Origin: Mytilus californianus
Lineage: Eukaryota
DNA: 64,000 nt
NCBI RefSeq assembly: GCF_021869535.1
Contig: NW_026262734.1
Coordinates: forward strand, 87,048,001-87,112,000
Direction of reading: 5' to 3'
A program made the position numbers and the translations under genes. The notes under the pieces were generated by a model that saw only the letters and a program-made list of their open reading frames with translations, was not told the DNA's origin and did no database searches. The first letter of the stretch is position 1, and every line of letters begins with the position of its first letter. Below are positions 2,031 through 64,000 of this stretch, piece after piece.

Positions 2031-2592
2031 CTTGATATAAGGGTAGTGTTGAGTAAATTGTAAAATTTAATTACTTTCCAATCATATTGCTAAATAAACA
2101 CCCTAAGGGGACATGTCACCCACTTTTCTAAGATAAAAAGGCTTATTATTGTCATGTATATAAAATGTATTATAATCTGAACAATTACTTTGTTAATAAG
2201 TGATATGTGTGTAAGTATTCTGAAATTGTAAACACTTTTTAGCAATGAGAAAAAAAATTAAATAGTCATTTTCATTACAAATAACTCAATAAATTATATG
2301 CTATGAATCGTAGAAAGAAGGAACAACCAGAAAATACTGACAAAAATAAAAAGTCCATTCTAACTGTTTATAAGTATGGTCCTCTTAAGACACAGACCAC
2401 TGAAGATTTGAGACTGCCTTTGATGACAATTGCTCTTTATCATCATTTAAACATATAATTTGATCACTATTTTCAATTCATTTAGTACTGTACAATATTA
2501 TTCATCAATATCATGAGTATCAAATTTAATGCTGATAAATGTCCATTTTCATAACATCAATTATTATCATGATTTTAAGTTCTTGAAACACT

Positions 2593-2764
2593 TCATGTCA
2601 TATCATTCGACAAGGGCATCTGGTTAAATTGTCATGTCATATCATTCGATAAGGTAATCTTGTTAAATTGTCATGTCATATCATTCGATAAGGTAATCTG
2701 GTTAAATTGTCATGTCATATCATTCGATAAGGTAATCTGGTTAAATTGTCATGTCATATCATAT
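2593..2764. repeat. 39-bp minisatellite, about 4.4 copies
   Basis: GTCATGTCATATCATTCGATAAGGTAATCTGGTTAAATT in tandem. Confidence 0.9.
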
Positions 2765-3198
2765 TCCATTCATTATATTCTGCTAATTGAAATTAAAAAA
2801 AAATATTTAACTAAATGTTGTTTTTATAACCTCGAAACTCAGTCTGGTACAATACTGGAATACAACATGTACAATACTGGTAAACAATTGTATTCCAGTA
2901 TTGTAGACAATACTAGTATACCAATATTGCAATCGCCAAGTACAGGAGATCATAATTGAGATGAAGAGTAGCAATCAAAGAGCGGTTTCCTTGCTTTTTT
3001 GTGTGTTTTTTGTTGTGCATGTTCTGATTTTGTGTCGTGGATGGATACCCAATATCCTTTGTTTTTCTATTTTTCTATTAAGAAATCTGAAAAAAAAATT
3101 CAAAATGAAAACAAAGCACCGATAATACATTTTAAATGAATAAACTGAGACATACAAGGCTGGTTCTCTCCCTTGCAACATACGGGTATCTGAGGAAG

Positions 3199-3858
3199 AC
3201 AGGTTACACGTGTAGGTGTCCCTAGCAAAGAGCAATTCACACCAGAAACCGCAGCTTGAAAACAGGTTGCAAGTGTGGGTGTCCCTAGCTAAGAGCAAAT
3301 TGCACCAGAAACCGCAGCTTGAAAACAGGTTGCACGTGTAAGTGTCCCTAGCTAAGAGCAATTGACACCATAGATCGCAGCTTGAAAAACAGGTTGCACG
3401 TGTAGGTATCCCAAGCTAAGAGCAATTCACACCAGAGATCGCAGCTTGAAAACAGGTTACACGTGTAGGTGTCCATAACTAAAAGCAATTCAAACCAGAG
3501 ATCGCAGCTTGAAAACAGGTTGCACGTGTAAGTGTCCCTAGCTAAGAGCAATTCACACCAGAGATCGCAGCTTGAAAACAGGTTGCACGTGTAGGTATCC
3601 CAAGCTTAGAGCAATTCACACCAGAGATCGCAGCTTGAAAACAGGTTACACGTGTGAATGTCACTAGCTAAGAGCAATTCACACCAGAGATCGCAGCTTC
3701 AAAACAGATTGCACGTGAAGGTATCCCTAGCTAAGAGCAATTCACACCAGAGATCGCAGCTTGAAAACAGGTTGCACGTGAAGGTGTCCCTAGCTAAGAG
3801 CAATTCACACCAGAGACCACAGCTTGAAAACAGTTTGCACGTGTAGGTGTCCCTAGCT
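3199..3858. repeat. 63-bp minisatellite, about 10.5 copies
   Basis: CACGTGTAGGTGTCCCTAGCTAAGAGCAATTCACACCAGAGATCGCAGCTTGAAAACAGGTTG in tandem, one 1-bp insertion near 3385. Confidence 0.95.
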
Positions 3859-40700: not shown

Positions 40701-43700
40701 CAAGGATTTTCTAACAAAAACAAGCGTTACTAATCCCGGATTTCACGTAAATACAACATTTCATGTCCATATCTTATATTAAAGAAGAGACTAAGGAGCC
40801 GCTCGAAACACAAGAGTCAAGTAAAACTGAAAACGCCATGGCAAAAAAAAATATAGACAACGAAAAGACAAAACACTTTATAGAAAACTAAAGACTAAGC
40901 AACACAAAAAAAATGGATTTTAAATAATCTTAATTTATTACGAATAAATATTACGCAAAATTTGGAAAAAAAGTTCAAAACTAAGTTTACATATATTAAC
41001 TCTTATTCTTTTAAGCACAGCTTAATTATTATTTTTGTCAGGTTTTATTTATTTCTGTAATTTAATGTCTTGTGTTCTTGAAATTAACATGCAATACATG
41101 GCTTAATATTATGACGATTGATGCCATCACATTAGGATATGCCAAGCCTCCTATTGTCGCTTATGATGTTTTTAAAATAGCATTACTTAATTCATCCAAT
41201 ATATTATTGGGACTTGTTCTAGCTTAGGTATATACTCATTTGTCATCTGGAGAAGGAGAGGAAAGGGTAAGATGGGGCTACTGTTTGTGTCTTCGAAAAT
41301 AAAAAAAGAACAGTAGTACTACCAAATATCATCCGGTCAACTAATATATCGTATATGTATATAGATGTTACCAGAACGTCAGAAAACATCATTTACTTTT
41401 TTAAACTGTGTCTGGCATGTTTGCTCAAGAACTTCAAGCTACTTGGTTTTACTGCATAATTAAAACATATCCGAAGTAGTCTAATTGTGAGTTATAGCCA
41501 TTTATTCGTAATGCATTTTCAATAGGGTACAAGTGGTGTTCCATATTTTATTTCTCGAAGACTAGAAAAACTAGAAAAAAATTGGTAGCAGTTCCTGTTA
41601 CTAGAAATGTCAGCATTGCATCACAGCCAAACAAAATGTATTGTCATCCGGCAAAAGTTGACTTCAAATGAATTTGAAAAACAACATCTATTTTTTTAGC
41701 TAAATGAAAATGGCAAATTTTTAATGGCTCCCACTTGCAGAAATTGAATATACTTTCTATACTTTGCAAGATATGAATGTGATTTTCTGTATTTGTCAAA
41801 ACTTATTGCATAAGCTTTCGATTAAAAGTAATTCCAATCCTATATCATCCAATCAGAAGCCTTACAAGATTCTATTTTGAGTACCATCCTGGGGTAAAAA
41901 AAAACCTTGCAGGAAAAAATGTAAGCATATAATTGCGTTCTTGTAACCATATGAGCCAAGACCCTACCTACAAAAATATTTTGCAATGAGATGGTTTATA
42001 TAACTATATCAATTAATATTGCACACGTTTTATTTTTAATCAGATCTAAAATTATAATAGATCAAGTACATATATCATATATATTGCAAAGAATCTTTTA
42101 CAAAATGAAGGAATATAGATAGATTAAAATGTTATACATAATATCAGCTGATACTAGAAGTATGCCATAATGACTTGTACACTAAAAGAAATCAATACCT
42201 AAAACATCCATAAGGCATTAAAGTCGAAACGGTAAATTAAAAAAAAAATACGGATAAACTCAAAGCCATTTTAAAAACGAGAGCACATTGCGACTACAGA
42301 AAACAAAATCAAATAAAAGTGCTAACCATACTAAAAGTCTTTAAAATTCAGATGGAATATATTTTCTACGTCAGGAGTAGATTACCTTTTGTTTCCTATT
42401 TTGACATCGGACTCGGACTTCTCTTAAACTTAGTATTACTGTGCGTACTGTTGTGCGTTTGTTTTTTCTACATTGGCTAGAGGTAAAGGGGGAGGGTTGA
42501 GATCTCAAAAAACATGTTTGACCCCGCTGCATGATTGCGCCTGTCCCAAGTCAGGAGCCTTTGGCCTTTGTTAGTCTTGTATCATTTTTAGTTTTAGTTT
42601 CTTGTGTATAATTTGGAGTTTAGTATGACGTCCATTATCACTGAACTAGTATACATATTTGTTTAGGGGCCAGCTGAAGGACGCCTCCGGATGCGGGAGT
42701 TTCTCGCTGCATTGAAGACCCATTGGTGGCCTTCGACTGCTGTCTGCTCTATGGTTGGGTTGTTGTCTCTTTGACACATTCCCCATTTCCATTCTCAATT
42801 TTACCTTAGCTGTATTTGGCAAAACTTTTAGAAATTTTTGGTCCTCAATGCTCTTCAACTTCGTACTTTATTTGGCTTTTTTAACTTTTTTTTTATTCGA
42901 GCGTCACTGAGGAGTCTTTTGTAGACGAAACGCGCGTCTGGCGCAAATACAAAATTTCAATCCTTGTATCTATGATGAGTTTATTTGTACATTACTGATA
43001 GTCATATTTTCATGATCAGAATTAATAAACAAATAAGATGGAAACTTAGCTTATGATTTATTGAAAAATAACTCGAATCTTACTTAATTTTTTTGGACCA
43101 ATTTCTTACAGTCAACATTACGAGCATCTGTTTGGGCTTCGTACAAAGCTGAACAATTTTGGAAGACCCATCCGGCGACGTACGTTGCATGGCGGTACAT
43201 AGCAACAAAGGCAGGACTTATCAGGGTATATCCCGGAGTTTTGTTACTAAAATCATATGACCACGAGAAGCGAGCTTGGTAAACATTATCATACGCTGTT
43301 GTGCTGTTAGTTAATAGTCAGACCCAACATAACCTTGAATTAATAATTGCATTGAATTTGTGACAGTATGCCAAATTGCAAACACACATCGTTAAAGACA
43401 AGACATGGAATTATTTAGAATTTCTCAAATTGATTATAAACTTTATTAGCTATTAATACATTTTGTTTGAAAAGCCTTATTATGAAATAGCTTGTTTTTT
43501 TTTAAAAATAAGTCGCTTGTTTCTAATACAAGTAGAAATTGATAATGCTATTTTTAAAAGTAGAACAATTCTTAATGTCCAACATTGTTTTCAAAATAAA
43601 TTGAGAGCGTTAACCCATGACTTCAAAACGTCAACCATTAATTACAAGATAGTCCTTCAATGTCTCCCAAAAAAAAACCATGATATTTAATATTGTAGTT

Positions 43701-56449: not shown

Positions 56450-56679
56450 CAAAATAGAATCATGTGTCGACCCCAAACTCGAGATGAACATATGGCAGCA
56501 TACACTTGGTAAACTTGTTTTTGTATTTCAGAGAAATCAAAAACTAAACATGATGAAATAATTATGTGTTCAAAATTGCAGTTTATATTGCATCGATATT
56601 TCTTAAGCAAGTATATACAATTTGGACAAGTGGTTTCGAGGAAAATGGCAGGGTCATTTCCCTGAGGGTTTCTTATCGT

Positions 56680-56810
56680 CGAGTTGCAAGTTGCGAGTTG
56701 AAAAGGCCGAGTTGTGAGTTGCAAAAGTCGAGTTACGTGTTAAGAAATTCGAGTTGCGAATTACGAAGGTCGAATTGCGAGTTACGAAGGTCGAGTTGCG
56801 AGTTACAATA
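56680..56810 (+). repeat. 21-bp minisatellite with 7-bp sub-period (GAGTTGC GAGTTAC GAAGGTC)n
   Basis: Direct reading; the same array occurs inverted at about 59065-59228. Confidence 0.85.
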
Positions 56811-57288
56811 ATATTATGTTTCTCTAATTTCTTAAGAATTATATATATATAAACGGTCGTATATATAAACGGCCGGGTCGTCTGATTTTTGAAATAGAAT
56901 TTTCAGGTTTACTTCGTTTTTAATAAACAAAGCATATATGTACCCGAACTTAGTTATACGCTACATGAGGAAGTGTCCCGGTATTTAGATTACAGGATTT
57001 GAAAGAGTTATGTGATACATATTTATAAGAGTCTATATGTTGCAAAGTCACGCACGCTTAAATTTCTTTCATGAGAGCGACATTGTTCATTTTCTAAAAT
57101 AAAACAGGATATACTGTAGATATAAGACAAAATGTATACCATACTGAACAAATCAAGCATAAGAAAATAAATCATGTAGACAAATTAAATATACTTGCAA
57201 ATTATCGACATCTCACAGAATATAGCATGCACTGCGTTAGGCCTAAAGTAAATACTTATCAAATGTACCAGGCTTATAATATTTTCTA

Positions 57289-57330
57289 CGCCAGACGCGC
57301 GTTTCGTCTATACAAGACTCATCAGTGACG
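57289..57330 (-). ncRNA. Minimal type I hammerhead ribozyme, intact core
   Basis: Reverse complement reads CGTCA-CTGATGA-GTCttgtataGAC-GAAA-CGCGCG-TC-TGGCG. Confidence 0.8.
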
Positions 57331-59064
57331 CTTGATTAAAGGATATTCATTAGCATACCAAGTGCTAACTCTTCGTCTTTCGCAAAGATTTAGGGTATAT
57401 AGGCACAATTGTACATTTAACTTAGGAAAATATCTCATGAGTTAGTCAGAAATGTGATATGCTATGTGCTTTATGTGATAAATTAAATAATTTTGAACTT
57501 TGTTAACTTTGTGATTCAACCCCAAGCAGAGAGTGTATATATATACCAAATAGTTAATAATCGAGTTGTTCAATGTATGTATATCTGAATACTACAACGC
57601 AAAAATAAGCATGCTATATATGTCTTTCTATGGCATTATGGTAAATTCCTGGCATAGGAGATCATAATATGGATTTTTTTTTTAATTTGGAAAGTCTTTA
57701 TTTTACAATAAGCTATACCGCTGTTACAAAAAATAAAGGAACAGTTTTAAGGAATGTTAGTGCGTGTGTTTTTACGGTATGAGCACGGAAGCCTTGTCTG
57801 TCACAAGTTTACCTTTTTTACCTGCATGCAGCCTTGATACAAATGTTATAGTTTCAGATATCAGCTGGATATTGTACATTTTTCTAAATAAAAATGTGCT
57901 TCCTTTTCATTTTAATATCATGCCTGTCACGAGATCACCCGAAAAAAGTTAAACCCGGGTAAGTATGGCATCAAGTTGTATTTTTCAAATAACTAACAAC
58001 TCTTTAAAACTGCACTTTTTTCATATTGATGTAAAATGTTTTGACGTTTTATACAGACAATTCAAACTCTATTTAATCAGTTTCCCACCTACTGCACAAT
58101 GAGTTCCGTGTCAAAAAAAAAGTTAAAAGATTTATATTTGTCAGCATGTTATTCCTAAAGAACTTGATTGATTTGGGTATGATTAAAATGTTTTTTAGAA
58201 AGAAGTTACATATTCCAAAACTGCGTCTTTTGTCTCTTTTACAAAAGTATCTTTGACAGCTACATGTATAGAATAAAGAATAGAAACGGGGAATGTGTCA
58301 AAGAGACAACAACCCAACCAAAATATACAAGTCAACCCAAGGCCACCAATGGGTCTTCAACACAGCGAGAAATCCCACACCCAGAGACAGCCCCGAACAG
58401 GCCCCGAAACACAATGTAAACTAGATCGAGAAAATGGACGCCATTCTATGCTCCGAAACATATAGATGAACCAAAATTAAAAAATATACAAGACCAACAA
58501 AGGCAAGAGGTTCCTGACTTAGGGAAAACGCAAAAAATTCGGCGGGGTTAAACAGGTTTTATGAGCGCTCAACCTTCCACCTTCACCTCTAGCCAATGTA
58601 GACATACATGTATATAACTTAAACGTCTACAATTTTGAGTGTCACTGCCAAAGAAAAATTTGTTCGGTCCCTAACAAATATTGCCCCTGCAGCTGCCCCA
58701 AAGAGCCCACTCTTAACTAAATCGGCAAAAGGGGTCTTTTACATATATGCACTATAGTTTAGTTGCTATCTCCCTTTACGTTTAATATGACGGTGCTAGC
58801 TATGAAATTTAATAATGATTAAACTACAAGCCATTCGCTGTATTTCAAAAGGCTATATGTTTCTTCAGAAAATAACCATACTTTGAGTAGTGATTATGTA
58901 AGCAATCCATTATTTTTTTTTAAACGAGACTCAGATGAAGTCCAAACAACAAAAAGAATCAGCAATACTGTATACAATTCTATAAGCAATCATCATTCAA
59001 AAATGTTAAAGAGGTACACAAACAAAAATTAAAATAGTTTTCCCATTTTCACGCAAATCTAATT

Positions 59065-59228
59065 TTGTAACTCGCAACTCGACTTTCGTAACTCGCAACT
59101 CGACCCTCGTAACTCGCACCTCGACCTTCTTAACTCGCAACTCGACCTTCGTAACTCGTAACTCGACCTTCGTAACTCGCAACTCGACTTTCGTAACTCG
59201 CAACTCGACTTTTGTAACTCGCAACTCT
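59065..59228 (-). repeat. Inverted copy of the 21-bp minisatellite, about 7.5 units
   Basis: (GTAACTCGCAACTCGACYTTC)n on +. Confidence 0.9.
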
Positions 59229-59282
59229 ATACTCGACAACAAGTGAATCTCCATTTCCCTAAAGGGGAAGGTGTTAACAAAG

Positions 59283-60110
59283 TTGAATGTCTGAAAGTAC
59301 CTAACAGCCACGTTAGTCTATTCTCCAGGACCCAACACATCGTGTTTCTGCAGTACAGAATAGGACAAACTCTACAATATTCCGTGGCTCATATGAAGGG
59401 TGGGTGCTTCATCAGGGGTCCTGATCCAATCCTTCATGTTGTACTAAGCTTTGACTATCGAGCTACTCAGTATTTCTTTTAAGTTCCGATGTCTACTATA
59501 CGCCACCATTGCGAAGTAGTTTTTTATAATGTTTTCGCAAAGCTTTATTTATATTTCCTAACGAAAAGTGATATTTAGTTACAAATACTAGTGGTATCTG
59601 CTTGTCAGATTCTTGTTTAAAGCGGAGTAACTCTGATCGTTCGATATTGAGAGCCGATTCACAGTTACGATGTATTTCATGATCCTTATATCCCCTTTGC
59701 TTGAGATGGCCTTTGAATTTACAAATTGTATCTTTTAAATTTTGCGTGTTGCTGTTGTTTCGGTGGTGGCGAATAGCATCCCTTTTATAAATCCAGAGAA
59801 AACTGTTGGGTAATGCATAGACGTCCTATCTAAATATTGAAATATATTAGTAGGTTTGATGTAGCACTTTATATCAAGAATACCGGTGTTCCTGAACCTC
59901 AACCTTTTATGTACGACTGTATCGAGAAAAATAATTTCTTCGTTTGAAATTTCATAAGTAAACTTTAATAAAGGGTGGTGATCATTTGCTATTTTAAAAA
60001 ACTCCTCAACCTCTTCTCGTGATGAATGAGCTATTATAAACGCATCATCTCTATACCTTCCGTAAAATAAGATCTTATTTTCATACTTATATTTTTCAAT
60101 AATTTACATG
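59283..60110 (-). mobile_element. Inverted, 5'-truncated second copy of the same PLE (RT C-half plus terminal repeat)
   Basis: Reverse complement of about 61530-62370 with scattered substitutions, a 35-nt deletion in the thumb, and YLDRTSMHYPTVF retained where the + copy is deleted. Confidence 0.88.
59327..59422 (-). ncRNA. Second copy of the hammerhead-like motif (CTGATGA core)
   Basis: Same architecture in the inverted PLE copy; core box differs only at the free N7 position. Confidence 0.5.
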
Positions 60111-60788
60111 TTGAATGTCTGAAAGTACCTAAAAGCCACGTTTGCCTATTCTCCAGGACCCAACACATCGTGTTCCTGCAGTACAGAATAGGACAAACTC
60201 TTCTGTGATGTTCTTCATTTGATCCCTAAACAAATTGTTCATTTCAACATTGCCCAGATCAGGGGTGCATCTCATATTCAGGTGACAGACGGGCGCGGCA
60301 TATTATTATATGTTTTGCCGTACACCATTCCTTCTCTGGCTTTTGCTATGCTGAGTCTCTGATTCATTACCTCATCTATTCGGTTAACAGCTTCAAAAGC
60401 AATATCTATGGGTGATGGTCCGGTACTGTTATTTAGATCTGTTAGGTCCAGATCATCGAAGTCACTGTCGTTCATTTCATTAGCAGCGATCGCGAGTGCT
60501 TCTTGGTTTAATGGTGGATGTGAACTGTCCATCTTTCTACTTTTCTTTAATTTTAGCTTGTTCCTTCCTGTCTTATTCATAATATGAATGAAATAATCGA
60601 ACTAGGTTACCAGAGATTCTTTTAGCTCTGCTTTTTCCAAACTCATAAATTAACACGTGTCAGCAAATTTTTGACAATGGCGAGACTTAAGAATGCCTTG
60701 CAGAAACACTTATCAAGTGTGAGTCCCTGAGTGTTGAATGTCTGAAAGTACCTAGCAGCCACGTTTGCCTATTCTCCAGGACCCAACA
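60111..60788 (-). mobile_element. PLE terminal-repeat fragments (60111-60210, 60733-60788) enclosing a probable PLE 5' region with ORF start (60580-60278)
   Basis: Both fragments match the element 3' end (GTTGAATGTCTGAAAGTACC...GGACCCAACA on +); between them a 100-codon ATG ORF MNKTGRNKLKLKKSRK... Confidence 0.6.
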
Positions 60789-61064
60789 GATGAGCTCAAC
60801 ATCATGATTTATTATTAAATAGATGTACGATAAAATGTGTGCATTCAGTTCCCATTTGTCTGTGATTGCAGACAGCTGGTTTTCCCATTGTGGTTTGTTT
60901 TAGGCGTAAAGGTTATAACTGTGATCGCAATTATAACTATCAGAATTGCAATCGTCAATATTAAGAATGGCTCGCAGATTTAAAAAAGAAAGTAAAAACT
61001 GTTAAACAAAAAATAAGAAAACTCGATCGGGTTTCTAGAAAGAAAAGACAAAAAAAAGCAAACG

Positions 61065-62210
61065 ATGGCAGTAAATGAATTGCCCCCATGCAGACCAATT
61101 ATTTCTCAATGTAACTCTGTCACCGAAAGGGTTAGCAAATTTATTGATTACTTTTTGATACCTATAGTTAAAAGACAGACCAGTTACATTAGAAATAGTG
61201 GGGATTTCATAAATAAAATAGAAAGTTTATGGCCTGATCGGGATTGCCTTTTAATCTCTTTTGACTGCACCAGCATGTATACAAACATGGAGTTCAATGA
61301 ACTCATTTAATCTGTTGGACGGGCTTATAGCAGTGCAGTAATAGAAGATTATCCGATAAAATTACCTAGCTGTGAAACAATTAAATCGTTAGTAGCCACA
61401 GTGTTGAAAAACAATTATTTTGAATTTAATGACCGATACTTTGTACAGAAAATAGGCGCTAGTATGGGAAGTAAATGCAGCCAAGAAATTTGTTATATTA
61501 GAGCATTCGAAGTTATCAATGAAATTAGTAAAAAATATAAGTATAAAAATAAGATCTTATTTTACGGAAGGTATAGAGATGATGCGTTTATAATAGCTCA
61601 TTCATCACGAGAAGAGGTTGAGAAGGTTTTTTTTAAATAGCAAATGATCATCACCCTTTATTAAAGTTTACTTATGAAATTTCAAACGAAGAAATTATTT
61701 TTCTCGATACAGTCGTACATAAAGGGTTGAGGTTCAGGAACACCGGTATCCTTGATATAAAGAGCTACATCAAACCTACTAATACATTTCAATATTTAGA
61801 TGTATAACCTAACAGTCTTCTCTGCATTGATAAAAGGGGAAGCTATTCGCCACCACCGAAACAACAGCAACACAAAGAATTTAAAAGATACAATTTGTAA
61901 ATTCAAATGCCATCTTAAGCAAAGGGGATATAAGGAGCATGAAATACATCGTAACTGTGAATCGGCTCTCAATATCGAACGATCAGAGTTACGAAACTTT
62001 AAACAAGAATCTGACAAGCAGATACCACTAGTATTTGTAACTAAATATCACTTTTCGTTAGGAAATATAAATAAAGCTTTGCGAAAACATTATAAAAAAC
62101 TACTTCGCTATGCGAAATGTAGTGAGCTATTTCCAAAACCACCAATGGTGGCGTATAGTAGACATCGGAACTTAAAAGAAATACTGACCAGCTCGATAGT
62201 CAAAGCTTAG
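61065..62210 (+). mobile_element. Decayed Penelope-like retroelement RT (one stop, a frameshift and a deletion)
   Basis: PCRPIISQCNS..TERVSKFIDYFL, LLISFDCTSMYTN, KIGASMGS, GRYRDDAF, IKFTYE/IIFLDT, YIKPTNTFQYL, KGEAIR, PKPPMVAYSRHRNLKEIL are PLE RT and thumb motifs; TAA at 61308-61310, frameshift near 61637. Confidence 0.88.
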
Positions 62211-62231
62211 TACAACATGAAGAATTGGGTC

Positions 62232-62327
62232 AGGACCCCTGACGAAGCACCCACCCTTCATAAAAGCCACGGAATATTGTAGAGTTTGTCCTATTCTGTA
62301 CTGCAGAAACACGATGTGTTGGGTCCT
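62232..62327 (+). ncRNA. Candidate type I hammerhead-like ribozyme in the PLE terminal repeat
   Basis: AGGACCC-CTGACGA-[60 nt]-GAAA-CACgatGTG-TT-GGGTCCT: 7-bp stem I, core boxes, stem III, GUU site; stem II junction is non-canonical. Confidence 0.5.
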
Positions 62328-62849
62328 GGAGAATAGGCAAACATGGCTGTTAGGTACTTTCAGACATTCAAAACATACACTTGGTAAACTTTTTTTGTAT
62401 TTCAGAGACATAAAAAATTAACCATGATGAAATAATTATGTGTTATATTGCATCGATATTTCTTAAGCAAGTATATACAATATGGACAAGTAGTTTCGAG
62501 GAAATATCAGGGTCATTTCCCTAAAGGAGACGAAGTTAACAAAGTTAACATCAAACCCTGAAGACTAAAGACACGAAAAACCGATCTAAGTGAACCGACA
62601 ATTACTGAAAACTAGTTCAAAGTTTATGACAACTTATATATAAGTATGTTTCCCAGACTAAAATCAATCAGTTACTGTACACAACCATCGAATTAAGTGT
62701 AAGTATGTCAAAAGCAGTCTGAAAAAACGTCACCTTGTGCAATGCTAAAATACAAGTTTCGACAGGATGCAAGACCGTCGGCTCAACTGTAATATACGGC
62801 AGAAGTAGTTCTTTACCATATTATATATGCATATGTAAATGCTCTTTTG

Positions 62850-63570
62850 TTCCGACGTTGGAAAGTTCCGGGCGGAAAGAATTATCTAGCCGAAACGTTC
62901 CGGAGTAACTTATTAACTAGTTACTTTGTTCTTCCACTGGTTTAAAAGTTCCACCGGAACAAAGTGACTAGTTGAAAAGTTCCAACGGAACATATCAACT
63001 AGTTAGAAAGTTCCTTTTTGCCAAATTAGTCAAAACCGGAACTTATCAACTAGCCACAAAGTTCCTCTTTGGCAAATAAGTCTAAACCGGAACTAACAAA
63101 CTAGCCCAAAAGTTCAAACGGAACTTATCAACCAGTCACAAAGTTCCATTTGGAGAATTGATACAAAGAACCACATGAGGACGGGGGTATTCTTCCCTCT
63201 CTTGAGGGTACTATGAATACTAAATTTGCATGATAATGCAACTTATTCCGTTTTATGTGAGCTATGAAATACAACTTAAATTTTGCATATTTGTCACCAA
63301 AGAAACCCCTTTCAGTGCGTTGGGTATTCTTGTAAATTAATGATTTGCTCTTATATATACTGATACTCATTCTTCCCCCTCTTTCTACAAAAAGGACGAA
63401 ATATGGTATATTCGGAACGATGTAACTAGTTGTTCTGTTCCGCCAGAACATTTCAACTAGCTACATTGTTCCGGGACTTTTCAACTAGCTACTTTTTTCC
63501 GGAACTTTTCGACTGCACTCGGAATAAAACAACTAGTTGAAAAGTTCCGCCGGAACAAAGTAACTGACAG
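62850..63570. repeat. Modular array of palindromic motifs (AAAGTTCC-spacer-GGAAC...ACTAG), foldback-like
   Basis: About 6 units at 62940-63150, inverted units at 63415-63510, and a further direct unit at 63530-63565. Confidence 0.65.
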
Positions 63571-63659
63571 AACATAGTGGCTGTTACACATACAGCAGCA
63601 GAATATCTATGAAATCTGTATGAAATAATATGTATGCCTGTTAACGTAGTTTCAAATGA

Positions 63660-63720
63660 CTGACACATTAACACATTGACACATCGACACATAGACACAT
63701 GGACACATAAACACATCGAC
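63660..63720. repeat. 8-bp tandem repeat (GACACATN)n
   Basis: tgacacat taacacat tgacacat cgacacat agacacat ggacacat aaacacat. Confidence 0.85.
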
Positions 63721-64000
63721 ATTAATTAATTGTATAAAACAATATTTCAGAAAGTTGGAGAACTATTTTTTCTGTATAACCCATGACTCTTTTTGCGTTT
63801 TTCAGTGAACAATTTTTAAGTTTTCTCATTTAGGTTAGTATCTCAGTTACAATGAGTAATTAATCAACTATAATTGGTTTTGAGAATTGTACTAGTTTTG
63901 TTTTACAACTTTTATGTGATGTATTTACTGGTATCAAAATGCAATCCTTGGAAATAATGTAAAGTAGATATTATTGGAATGTGTCAAGGTAGCGTTTTTT

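What the first reader, a model, noticed from the sequence alone, without database searches (positions are those of the whole stretch)
61065..62370. Penelope-like RT that ends with no C-terminal GIY-YIG endonuclease in two independently decayed copies
Seen: the RT ORF stops at ..RHRNLKEILTSSIVKA-TAG and the terminal repeat ends about 160 nt later; the inverted copy has the same TAG at the same place although it carries different lesions, so the stop predates decay. No Cys linker or GIY-YIG motif follows in the frame I read. Known: Penelope/Poseidon and Neptune PLEs carry GIY-YIG right after this motif; endonuclease-less PLEs (Athena, Coprina) are mostly telomere-associated; Naiad/Chlamys put the nuclease at the N terminus. 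Inference: an endonuclease-less or domain-permuted PLE lineage sitting at an apparently interstitial site.
Basis: partly seen in the sequence, partly recalled or inferred. Interest (0 to 1): 0.7.

Follow-up and report, generated by a model that had tools for sequence, protein, structure and literature searches.

The report
Nuclease-less Penelope-like retrotransposon in a mussel
Two broken, inverted copies of a 3.4-kb mussel retrotransposon whose reverse transcriptase ends by design before the point where related elements carry their DNA-cutting domain; it belongs to a large, old nuclease-less group that has still spread to ordinary chromosome-internal sites.

Summary
Both window copies stop at the same TAG after ...RHRNLKEILT/SSSIVKA, and the element ends 161 nt later.

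The stop is native to the family. A tandem array elsewhere in this Mytilus genome holds a complete 3,399-nt unit. It has ORF1 (223 aa, all-helical) and a reverse transcriptase (RT) ORF ending at the same TAG. A hammerhead ribozyme core starts 19 nt after the stop. A six-frame search found no GIY-YIG endonuclease (EN) anywhere in the unit.

More than 90 homologous proteins of about 643 aa, at 33-70% identity, end at the same motif. They come from Mytilus, Pinctada, Saccostrea, Saccoglossus and unnamed assemblies. In an exhaustive search the best 57 cluster representatives all lack the nuclease. The nearest nuclease-bearing relatives are at most about 35% identical and carry it C-terminally behind a CX2-5CxxC linker, the Neptune/Nematis trait.

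The domain-permuted (Naiad) reading fails: there is no N-terminal EN, no CxC motif and no insertion in the fingers domain (IFD); the DKG motif is kept and a hammerhead is present. The telomeric (Athena/Coprina) habit also fails: about 90 sharp 3' ends are dispersed inside chromosomes, with no telomeric repeats, variable 5' truncation and tandem or inverted arrangements.

How the element obtains a 3'-OH primer is not known. Verdict: a real nuclease-less Penelope-like element (PLE) lineage and a new variant of a known kind. Its named clade could not be tested.

The parts
60787..62371 (+). Plus-strand copy of the element. It corresponds to unit positions 1123-1396 joined to 2071-3399 of the natural 3,399-nt unit (L031:5068-8466). 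About 675 nt encoding the N-terminal RT motifs are deleted internally.
   Evidence: blastn of the natural unit against the window, 95.8-97.5% identity; translation.
61065..62210 (+). Decayed RT coding remnant (RT motifs 2-7 and thumb), broken by one in-frame stop and two frame changes. It ends at the family's native TAG (62208-62210).
   Evidence: (RVT_1, weak); alignment with homologues.
62211..62371 (+). 161-nt 3' UTR / terminal repeat. The sharp 3' terminus ...GACATTCAA is shared by all genomic copies.
   Evidence: one search gave 87 candidates, 40 scored, all 91-100% identical.
62230..62329 (+). Type-I hammerhead-like ribozyme core. Stem I is 9 bp (62230-62238 with 62321-62329), CUGACGA is at 62239-62245, a 60-nt stem-II segment follows, GAAA is at 62306-62309, and stem III is CAC/GUG. 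Cleavage is predicted between 62320 and 62321.
   Evidence: Own descriptor scan. The same geometry occurs in complete copies and in relatives L039 and L040. Rfam does not report it.
59283..60105 (-). Minus-strand 5'-truncated copy (unit positions 2541-3399). It has the same stop (59444-59446 on the + strand) and the same hammerhead core (59325-59424).
60111..60201 (-). Fragment of the 3' terminal repeat (unit 3309-3399), lying in tandem upstream of the truncated minus copy (a pseudo-LTR-like junction).
   Evidence: (D4, I9).
60199..60731 (-). 5' part of an element (unit 86-616): the 5' UTR and the first ~100 codons of ORF1 (ATG at 60580, open to 60278).
   Evidence: ORF1 profile hits in the window.
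60734..60791 (-). Another fragment of the 3' terminal repeat (unit 3342-3399), directly upstream of the 5' part. Here the minus-strand structure abuts the plus-strand copy head to head.
   Evidence: (I11).

Best explanation
WHAT IT IS
The locus is a compound, decayed insertion of a ~3.4-kb Penelope-like retrotransposon family of a Mytilus genome. It consists of head-to-head inverted copies plus terminal-repeat fragments.

The family's natural unit encodes two proteins:
- ORF1, 223 aa, a three-helix, coiled-coil-like protein with no known domain.
- An RT-only ORF2 of about 643 aa. It has a KR-rich start, the PLE motifs GxKF and DKG, the RT core and the thumb.

ORF2 stops about 10 residues before the point where canonical PLEs continue into the CX2-5CxxC linker and the GIY-YIG nuclease. 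Nineteen nt after the stop lies a type-I hammerhead ribozyme core, and 161 nt after the stop the element ends. There is no endonuclease at either end or in any frame.

This state is old and selected. A large assemblage of ~640-aa RT-only proteins in bivalves and other marine invertebrates ends at the same motif.

SHOWN
- About 90 copies with one precise 3' terminus.
- Variable 5' truncation.
- Partial tandems and inverted pairs.
- Dispersed chromosome-internal sites.
These are the footprints of target-primed reverse transcription seen in nuclease-bearing PLEs.

INFERRED
- The RT copies a unit-length RNA starting at the fixed 3' terminus. The RNA is probably trimmed by the hammerhead from tandem or read-through transcripts.
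- The priming 3'-OH is not made by the element. My preferred reading (about 50%) is that it uses pre-existing nicks, breaks or replication intermediates.
- The main alternative (about 25-30%) is a nick made in trans by the nuclease of co-resident EN+ PLEs.
For: - Complete unit and same stop. The array at C165 has a 3,400-nt period. The RT frame of 597-628 aa ends ...IVKA*.
- No GIY-YIG: Pfam; six-frame search with a PLE-EN HMM, with positive controls.
- ORF1: the fold is all-alpha, with no PDB fold match at E <= 1e-3. It is homologous to the ORF1 of the Pinctada element, 26% identity, E 2e-20.
- Depth of the trait: of the 120 proteins listed of 133 found, the first 99 lack the nuclease, and their ends align. 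In the exhaustive search, none of the best 57 representatives has it.
- Tree: the query lies in a clade of 29 nuclease-less rows (SH-aLRT 98). All 31 nuclease-bearing rows lie in a separate clade (SH-aLRT 99).
- Hammerhead core in the Mytilus copies, L039 and Pinctada L040.
- Insertion footprints.
- Interstitial, no telomeric repeats.
Against: - The source of the 3'-OH is not shown by anything here.
- The test for target-site duplications on 11 simple copies was at chance level. It is inconclusive, because BLAST-defined 5' junctions are imprecise.
- In the array copies used as reference, the RT frame is separated from its KR-rich start by a frame change. No single copy was shown to be fully intact.
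- The tree used a quick search, is unrooted and has no named reference elements. Whether the nuclease was lost or never present, and the clade's name, stay open.
- ORF1 is not detectable in the more distant relatives (L039, L041-L043), so it is not a constant of the group.
Confidence: 0.8

Rival explanations
1. The family makes its own RT but no nick. It depends on the GIY-YIG nuclease of co-resident nuclease-bearing PLEs, supplied in trans.
For: - The genome holds at least 1,480 GIY-YIG candidates, including open frames of 755-911 aa and tandem arrays.
- The family shows the tandem/inverted compound structure that the literature ties to nuclease-bearing PLEs and says EN-deficient fungal and protist PLEs lack (PMC3846280).
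Against: - No nucleotide similarity between this family's UTRs or termini and 30 sampled EN+ loci at E <= 0.01.
- No target-site duplications above chance.
- In rotifers no cross-mobilisation of EN-deficient PLEs by EN+ PLEs was seen (PMC3846280).
- In PLEs the nuclease is normally part of the RT polypeptide, so trans action needs an extra assumption (inference).
Confidence: 0.27
2. The family is already covered by a named group. It would be an animal branch of the Coprina/Neptune assemblage or a relative of the Neptune-like nuclease-less MjPLE01 of kuruma shrimp, so nothing new beyond a new host.
For: - The nearest nuclease-bearing relatives carry the CX2-5CxxC linker (regex count 43 of 50; by eye about 38-40 lie in the true linker). 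PMC8557442 gives this as the Neptune/Nematis trait.
- The same paper reports Neptune as paraphyletic with EN- Coprina, and cites MjPLE01 as an EN loss inside a Neptune-like lineage.
Against: - No named reference sequence could be brought into the tree.
- The defining habits of Coprina (telomere attachment, reverse-complement telomeric repeats at the 3' end) are not met.
- The held library has no paper describing a large interstitial EN- clade in bivalves.
Confidence: 0.3
3. It is a domain-permuted (Naiad/Chlamys-type) PLE whose N-terminal nuclease was missed because copies are 5'-truncated.
For: - Naiads dominate bivalve genomes and were first mistaken for EN- elements for this very reason (PMC8557442).
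- The unit length of 3.4 kb is in the Naiad range.
- ORF1 (223 aa) has the size quoted for the Naiad EN domain (220-275 aa).
Against: - Complete units were recovered. ORF1 is all-helical with no GIY-YIG signal.
- The DKG motif is kept, not changed to DKA. There is no CxC motif between the KR block and GxKF. The RT3-RT4 spacing matches canonical PLEs, so there is no IFD.
- A hammerhead core is present.
Confidence: 0.02
4. It is a recent deletion derivative or decay artefact. The stop and missing nuclease would be a lesion of a young non-autonomous subfamily of an EN+ element.
For: The two window copies are 95-97% alike, so on their own they cannot date the stop.
Against: - The same end occurs in copies 82-100% identical across the genome.
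- The same end occurs in homologues at 33-70% identity in other genera and phyla.
- No EN+ protein above about 35% identity was found among 1.84 billion representatives.
Confidence: 0.02

Closest known systems
Neptune / Nematis-type Penelope-like elements (C-terminal GIY-YIG with a CX2-5CxxC linker)
   Same: - RT with a KR-rich start, GxKF and DKG motifs and the same thumb-end motif (..AY.R..NL.D.L..).
- Hammerhead in the terminal repeat.
- 5' truncation and tandem/inverted compound insertions.
- These are the nearest nuclease-bearing relatives in searches and in the tree.
   Different: - The ORF stops about 10 residues before the linker, so there is no nuclease.
- There is a separate upstream ORF1.
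- RT identity is only about 30-35%.
MjPLE01 (Neptune-like EN- PLE of kuruma shrimp, Koyama et al. 2013, as cited in PMC8557442 and PMC3846280)
   Same: An animal PLE without the nuclease that coexists with EN+ PLEs in one genome. It is cited as an example of EN loss inside an EN+ clade.
   Different: It was not compared directly, because neither its sequence nor the paper is held. Here the EN- state characterises a whole deep assemblage of at least 45 of 89 sampled clusters, not one family.
Athena and Coprina (telomere-associated EN-deficient PLEs)
   Same: - No nuclease and a hammerhead motif near the 3' end.
- Athena also has an upstream ORF1 with a coiled coil (PMC8557442, Fig. 1 legend).
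   Different: - No reverse-complement telomeric repeats at the 3' end and no telomeric repeats at 5' junctions.
- Copies lie tens of Mb inside chromosomes.
- The tandem/inverted structure is said to be absent from fungal and protist EN- PLEs (PMC3846280).
- Athena is rotifer-specific.
Naiad / Chlamys (N-terminal GIY-YIG) and the EN- Chlamys PLE-X families
   Same: - Same unit size range and abundance in bivalves.
- The RT ends the ORF.
- PLE-X families also spread without an identified nuclease.
   Different: No N-terminal nuclease, DKG rather than DKA, no CxC, no IFD, and a hammerhead is present.

Membership tests
Penelope-like elements (as a class) | RT with the PLE-specific N-terminal motifs (GxKF/Y, DKG) and an RT core related to other PLE RTs | tested here: met
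   - The natural copy reads ..GRGLKFIP.. and ..SDKGGAIVI...
- It aligns over its full length with GIY-YIG-bearing PLE proteins P0100, P0104 and P0113.
- Pfam RVT_1 scores only 27.6 bits against a cut-off of 29.6. Homologues carry precomputed PF00078, PF26215 and PF28514.
Penelope-like elements (as a class) | Hammerhead ribozyme motif in the terminal repeat | tested here: met
   - The core nucleotides and three stems were found by an own descriptor in all Mytilus copies, in L039 and in Pinctada L040.
- The minimum-free-energy fold of the Pinctada motif gives the three-way junction.
- Rfam models miss it because stems II and III are expanded.
- Cleavage was not tested.
Penelope-like elements (as a class) | Variable 5' truncation, partial tandems (pseudo-LTRs) and adjacent inverted copies | tested here: met
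   Examples are the arrays at C165; loci L015, L016, L025; the inverted pairs in L008, L028, L029, L036; and the window itself.
Canonical EN+ PLEs (Penelope/Poseidon, Neptune, Nematis, Hydra) | C-terminal GIY-YIG endonuclease in the RT ORF | tested here: not met
   - The stop falls before the linker, with only 161 nt to the element end.
- The six-frame EN HMM search was negative while the controls were positive.
- Pfam was negative.
Naiad / Chlamys | N-terminal GIY-YIG endonuclease joined to the RT through a CxC motif | tested here: not met
   - ORF1 is a separate, all-helical protein.
- There is no GIY-YIG signal.
- There is no CxC between the KR block and GxKF.
Naiad / Chlamys | DKG changed to DKA; IFD of about 20 aa between RT3(A) and RT4(B); no canonical hammerhead | tested here: not met
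   DKG is kept. The RT3-RT4 spacing is within a few residues of that in EN+ P0100. A hammerhead core is present.
Athena / Coprina (EN-deficient, telomere-associated) | Absence of the endonuclease domain | tested here: met
Athena / Coprina (EN-deficient, telomere-associated) | Reverse-complement telomeric repeats at the 3' end, telomeric repeats capping truncated 5' ends, location at chromosome termini | tested here: not met
   - The 3' end is ...GACATTCAA(CA) in all copies, and the flanks are unrelated unique or repeat DNA.
- No (TTAGGG)n of 2 or more units occurs in 170 kb of loci or in the window.
- Copies lie at Mb-scale internal positions on at least 15 contigs.
Athena / Coprina / MjPLE01 | Placement of the RT inside the named clade in a phylogeny with reference sequences | not testable with these tools
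   No named reference sequences are available. The key papers (PNAS 2007, MBE 2017, Mar Biotechnol 2013) are not held, and no supplements are held.

The most novel reading that the evidence does not exclude
A major, ancient clade of animal Penelope-like elements retrotransposes genome-wide with no nuclease of its own, while keeping the tandem/inverted insertion architecture thought to reflect nuclease action.

If so, PLE integration does not intrinsically need GIY-YIG. Priming could occur at replication or repair intermediates, perhaps with hammerhead-processed or circular RNA templates.

If the root lies among the several deep nuclease-less lineages, the C-terminal nuclease of Neptune-like PLEs would be a later acquisition by an RT-only ancestor rather than the ancestral state.
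Probability: 0.3. Interest if true: 0.75.

Novelty: new variant of a known kind. Interest (0 to 1): 0.58.

Why it matters
The textbook picture of PLEs (PMC8557442) has two parts. Nuclease-bearing elements spread inside chromosomes. Nuclease-less ones are confined to chromosome ends, apart from sporadic losses.

Here a nuclease-less lineage is deep and diverse. It includes the best 57 of the 50%-identity cluster representatives in the exhaustive search, from several animal phyla. It is conserved in ORF length and dispersed inside mussel chromosomes, with the same insertion footprints as nuclease-bearing PLEs.

This gives a natural system for three questions: how a telomerase-related RT finds primers without an endonuclease; whether the nuclease was gained or lost in the Neptune-like radiation; and what the ribozyme placed directly after the stop codon contributes.

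Practically, it warns annotators that RT-only PLE models in bivalves are not always truncated Naiads or decayed canonical elements.

Tried and rejected
- Rfam scans of the window region, the natural unit and the Pinctada unit reported no hammerhead inside the element. A first pattern with a gap of at most 34 nt also found none.
- Pfam on ORF1 and on the extra ORFs of distant relatives gave nothing above noise.
- Foldseek of the ORF1 model against the PDB gave only non-specific helical matches, best E = 1.6. The ESM Atlas feature search gave unnamed mollusc and cnidarian clusters at 0.83-0.85, below the level that counts.
- The test for target-site duplications was at chance level and is inconclusive.
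- A search for termini shared with EN+ families found none in the 30 loci available. This sample is small against at least 1,480 candidates.
No expression or read-end data were obtained, and I did not try another route.
- The PNAS 2007 and MBE 2017 papers are not held, and no supplements of PMC8557442 are held.
Natural complete copies served instead.

Full report
1. WHAT IS IN THE WINDOW

The window is AT-rich eukaryotic DNA of about 32% GC. It lies at 87.05-87.11 Mb of a 115.5-Mb contig in a 1.65-Gb assembly. Protein hits of 86-95% identity to Mytilus edulis and M. coruscus models show that the host is a Mytilus mussel.

The region 59283-62371 holds a compound structure (repeat finding; blastn with a natural full-length unit).

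On the plus strand there is one copy at 60787-62371. It has an internal deletion of unit positions 1397-2070.

On the minus strand, read from high to low coordinates, there are four pieces:
- a 58-nt fragment of the 3' terminal repeat (60791-60734);
- the 5' part of an element with the start of ORF1 (60731-60199);
- a 91-nt fragment of the terminal repeat (60201-60111);
- a 5'-truncated copy (60105-59283).

The plus and minus structures meet head to head. PMC8557442 (section 6) describes exactly this arrangement as typical of PLE insertions: partial tandems forming pseudo-LTRs, plus an adjacent inverted truncated copy.

The plus copy's last RT frame ends ...RHRNLKEILTSSIVKA, then TAG at 62208-62210. 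Similarity to other copies ends at 62371, 161 nt later. The minus copy has the same stop at 59444-59446 and ends at 59283.

The two copies are 95-97% alike and carry different stops, frame changes and deletions. By themselves two such similar copies could not date the stop. The following evidence does.

3. THE STOP IS NATIVE TO THE FAMILY

A search of the window's own genome found at least 54 matches at 82-100% identity. One is a tandem array on contig C165 with a 3,400-nt period.

One array unit, L031:5068-8466 (3,399 nt), served as a natural reference. I built no consensus. The unit contains:
- ORF1, 223 aa.
- An RT frame of 597-628 aa that ends at the same ...IVKA-TAG.
- The same 161-nt 3' UTR.

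With its KR-rich start (MARRFKK...) the RT ORF is about 643 aa. In the array copies a frame change separates this start from the rest. In another copy (L038) the two run in one frame.

All genomic copies end at the same 3' terminus (...GACATTCAA, usually followed by CA). Their 5' ends vary: unit positions 1, 122, 431, 522, 609, 1361, 1717, 1793, 1951, 2002, 2041, 2109, 2245 and others. Several form partial tandems or inverted pairs.

Searching with the 161-nt UTR gave 87 candidates; 40 were scored and all were 91-100% identical. They lie on many contigs at internal positions.

4. NO NUCLEASE ANYWHERE

Pfam finds only a weak RVT_1 match in ORF2 and nothing in ORF1.

I built a PLE-endonuclease HMM from the C-terminal domains of homologues and ran it over all six frames of these targets:
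- the natural unit and the rest of the array;
- window 58000-64000;
- two further full-length Mytilus copies;
- the Pinctada tandem;
- three more relatives with 4-kb flanks.

Nothing scored better than E = 0.57. Three EN+ control loci of the same genome scored 1e-26 to 1e-37.

ORF1 folds as three long helices, 57-91, 111-162 and 167-200 (mean pLDDT 72; above 85 over most of residues 60-200). That is not the alpha/beta GIY-YIG fold. Foldseek found no significant PDB match.

ORF1 is conserved in the pearl-oyster relative (244 aa, 26% identity, E 2e-20) and in two unnamed proteins at 56-62% identity. It was not detected in more distant relatives.

5. THE TRAIT IS OLD AND WIDESPREAD

- The word-indexed search returned 133 homologues. 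The first 99 listed (33-95% identity) lack GIY-YIG and those of full length are about 640-650 aa. They come from Mytilus, Pinctada, Saccostrea, Saccoglossus and many unnamed assemblies; a partial Montipora protein is listed a little further down.
- In an alignment of 18 proteins, the 15 nuclease-less ones end within 0 to about 35 residues of the conserved ..P..AY.R..NL.D.L.. motif. The three nuclease-bearing ones continue from that point into a Cys-rich linker and GIY-YIG.
- The exhaustive HMMER search of 1.84 billion representatives found 16,649 relatives at E <= 1e-3 and 1,041 at E <= 1e-30. None of the best 57 has the nuclease. The first EN+ protein appears at 267 bits and 35% identity. All 52 EN domains detected are C-terminal.
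- A maximum-likelihood tree of 89 near-full-length RTs (quick IQ-TREE search, unrooted) places the query in a clade of 29 nuclease-less rows (SH-aLRT 98). All 31 EN+ rows fall in one other clade (SH-aLRT 99) that also holds 13 EN- rows. The remaining EN- lineages form an unresolved grade. At least five changes of state are needed. Gain cannot be told from loss without a root.
- The nearest EN+ relatives, and the co-resident Mytilus EN+ families, carry a CX2-5CxxC linker. PMC8557442 gives this as the Neptune/Nematis trait.

6. A RIBOZYME DIRECTLY AFTER THE STOP

Rfam reported no hammerhead in the element.

My own descriptor then found a type-I hammerhead core in both window copies (62230-62329 and 59325-59424) and in the array copies. 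It has a 9-bp stem I, CUGA(U/C)GA, a 60-nt stem-II segment, GAAA, a 3-bp stem III and U-H before stem I.

The same geometry occurs right after the RT stop in the element of P0008, whose RT is 52% identical. The Pinctada element has a fully canonical core: CUGAUGA, a GGCGG/CCGCC stem II, GAAA and GUC. Its minimum-free-energy fold reproduces the three-way junction.

Self-cleavage is not shown. The position leaves no room for a nuclease domain, and it is a PLE hallmark that Naiads lack (PMC8557442).

7. COMPARISON WITH KNOWN GROUPS

- Naiad/Chlamys (N-terminal nuclease) is excluded. There is no N-terminal EN, DKG is kept rather than changed to DKA, there is no CxC and no IFD, and a hammerhead is present.
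- Athena/Coprina share the lack of nuclease. Athena also shares an upstream coiled-coil ORF. Their defining telomeric habit is not met: no telomeric repeats in 170 kb of family loci or in the window, diverse flanks and internal chromosomal positions.
- I could not place this clade against named references. No paper in the held library describes a large interstitial nuclease-less PLE clade in bivalves.

8. MECHANISM

Shown: a fixed 3' terminus, variable 5' truncation and tandem/inverted compound copies at dispersed sites. These are the footprints of target-primed reverse transcription.

Inferred: the template is a unit-length RNA, plausibly processed by the hammerhead from tandem or read-through transcripts. 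The RT starts at the conserved 3' terminus.

The origin of the priming 3'-OH is unknown. I lean towards pre-existing nicks, breaks or replication intermediates, for three reasons: no duplications above chance in 11 copies, no termini shared with 30 EN+ loci, and the persistence of the RT-only design across a very deep clade.

A nick made in trans by the abundant co-resident EN+ PLEs remains a serious alternative.

9. LIMITS

- The tree is unrooted and comes from a quick search.
- There are no named references.
- No family consensus was built.

Noticed in passing
window 42907-42944 (+) and 57288-57331 (-): Two nearly identical canonical minimal type-I hammerhead ribozymes (6-bp stem I, 4-bp stem II, 13-nt stem-II segment). 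Rfam Hammerhead_1 scores the second at 32.8 bits, just under its cut-off of 34. They belong to another PLE or retrozyme family, not to the element studied.
   Followed up: partly
window 59031-59261, with an inverted counterpart at 56672-56813: An array of a 21-nt tandem repeat (CGCAACTCGACCTTCGTAACT-like, 8 or more units) abuts the 3' end of the minus-strand copy. An inverted array of the same repeat lies 2.3 kb to the left.
   Followed up: no
window 56518-56644 vs 62392-62504, and 59252-59284 vs 62514-62546: Direct repeats of host or other-repeat sequence (80-92% identity) flank the compound PLE structure on both sides. The PLE copies may therefore sit inside, or between, copies of another repeated element.
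   Followed up: no
window 62870-63565: A cluster of 31-nt-spaced short repeats with internal palindromes (CGGAAC...AACTAG...GTTCC). They gave weak, below-threshold matches to plant miRNA precursor models, which are most likely chance hits on a hairpin-rich repeat.
   Followed up: no
L042 (1869-3296, 6173-6634) and L043/L044 (1997-3769, 6428-7015): More distant nuclease-less relatives (P0078, P0092; 36-38% RT identity) carry a large upstream ORF (475 or 590 aa) and a downstream ORF (153 or 195 aa), none with a Pfam match. In one 27.9-kb contig the whole set recurs about 10.5 kb apart. These may be larger multi-ORF elements built around the same RT-only gene.
   Followed up: partly
G000 genome-wide, e.g. 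C110:55838761-55861102: The same genome holds at least 1,480 GIY-YIG candidates. They include a tandem array with a 3,927-nt period and open 755-aa frames of a canonical C-terminal-nuclease PLE, and frames of 855-911 aa that could not be fetched.
   Followed up: partly
L039 (466-1590): The element of P0008 (52% RT identity) repeats every ~3.05 kb. It has no ORF1-like frame between RT copies, only about 1.1 kb of non-coding DNA that includes the hammerhead core. ORF1 is therefore not universal in the clade.
   Followed up: partly
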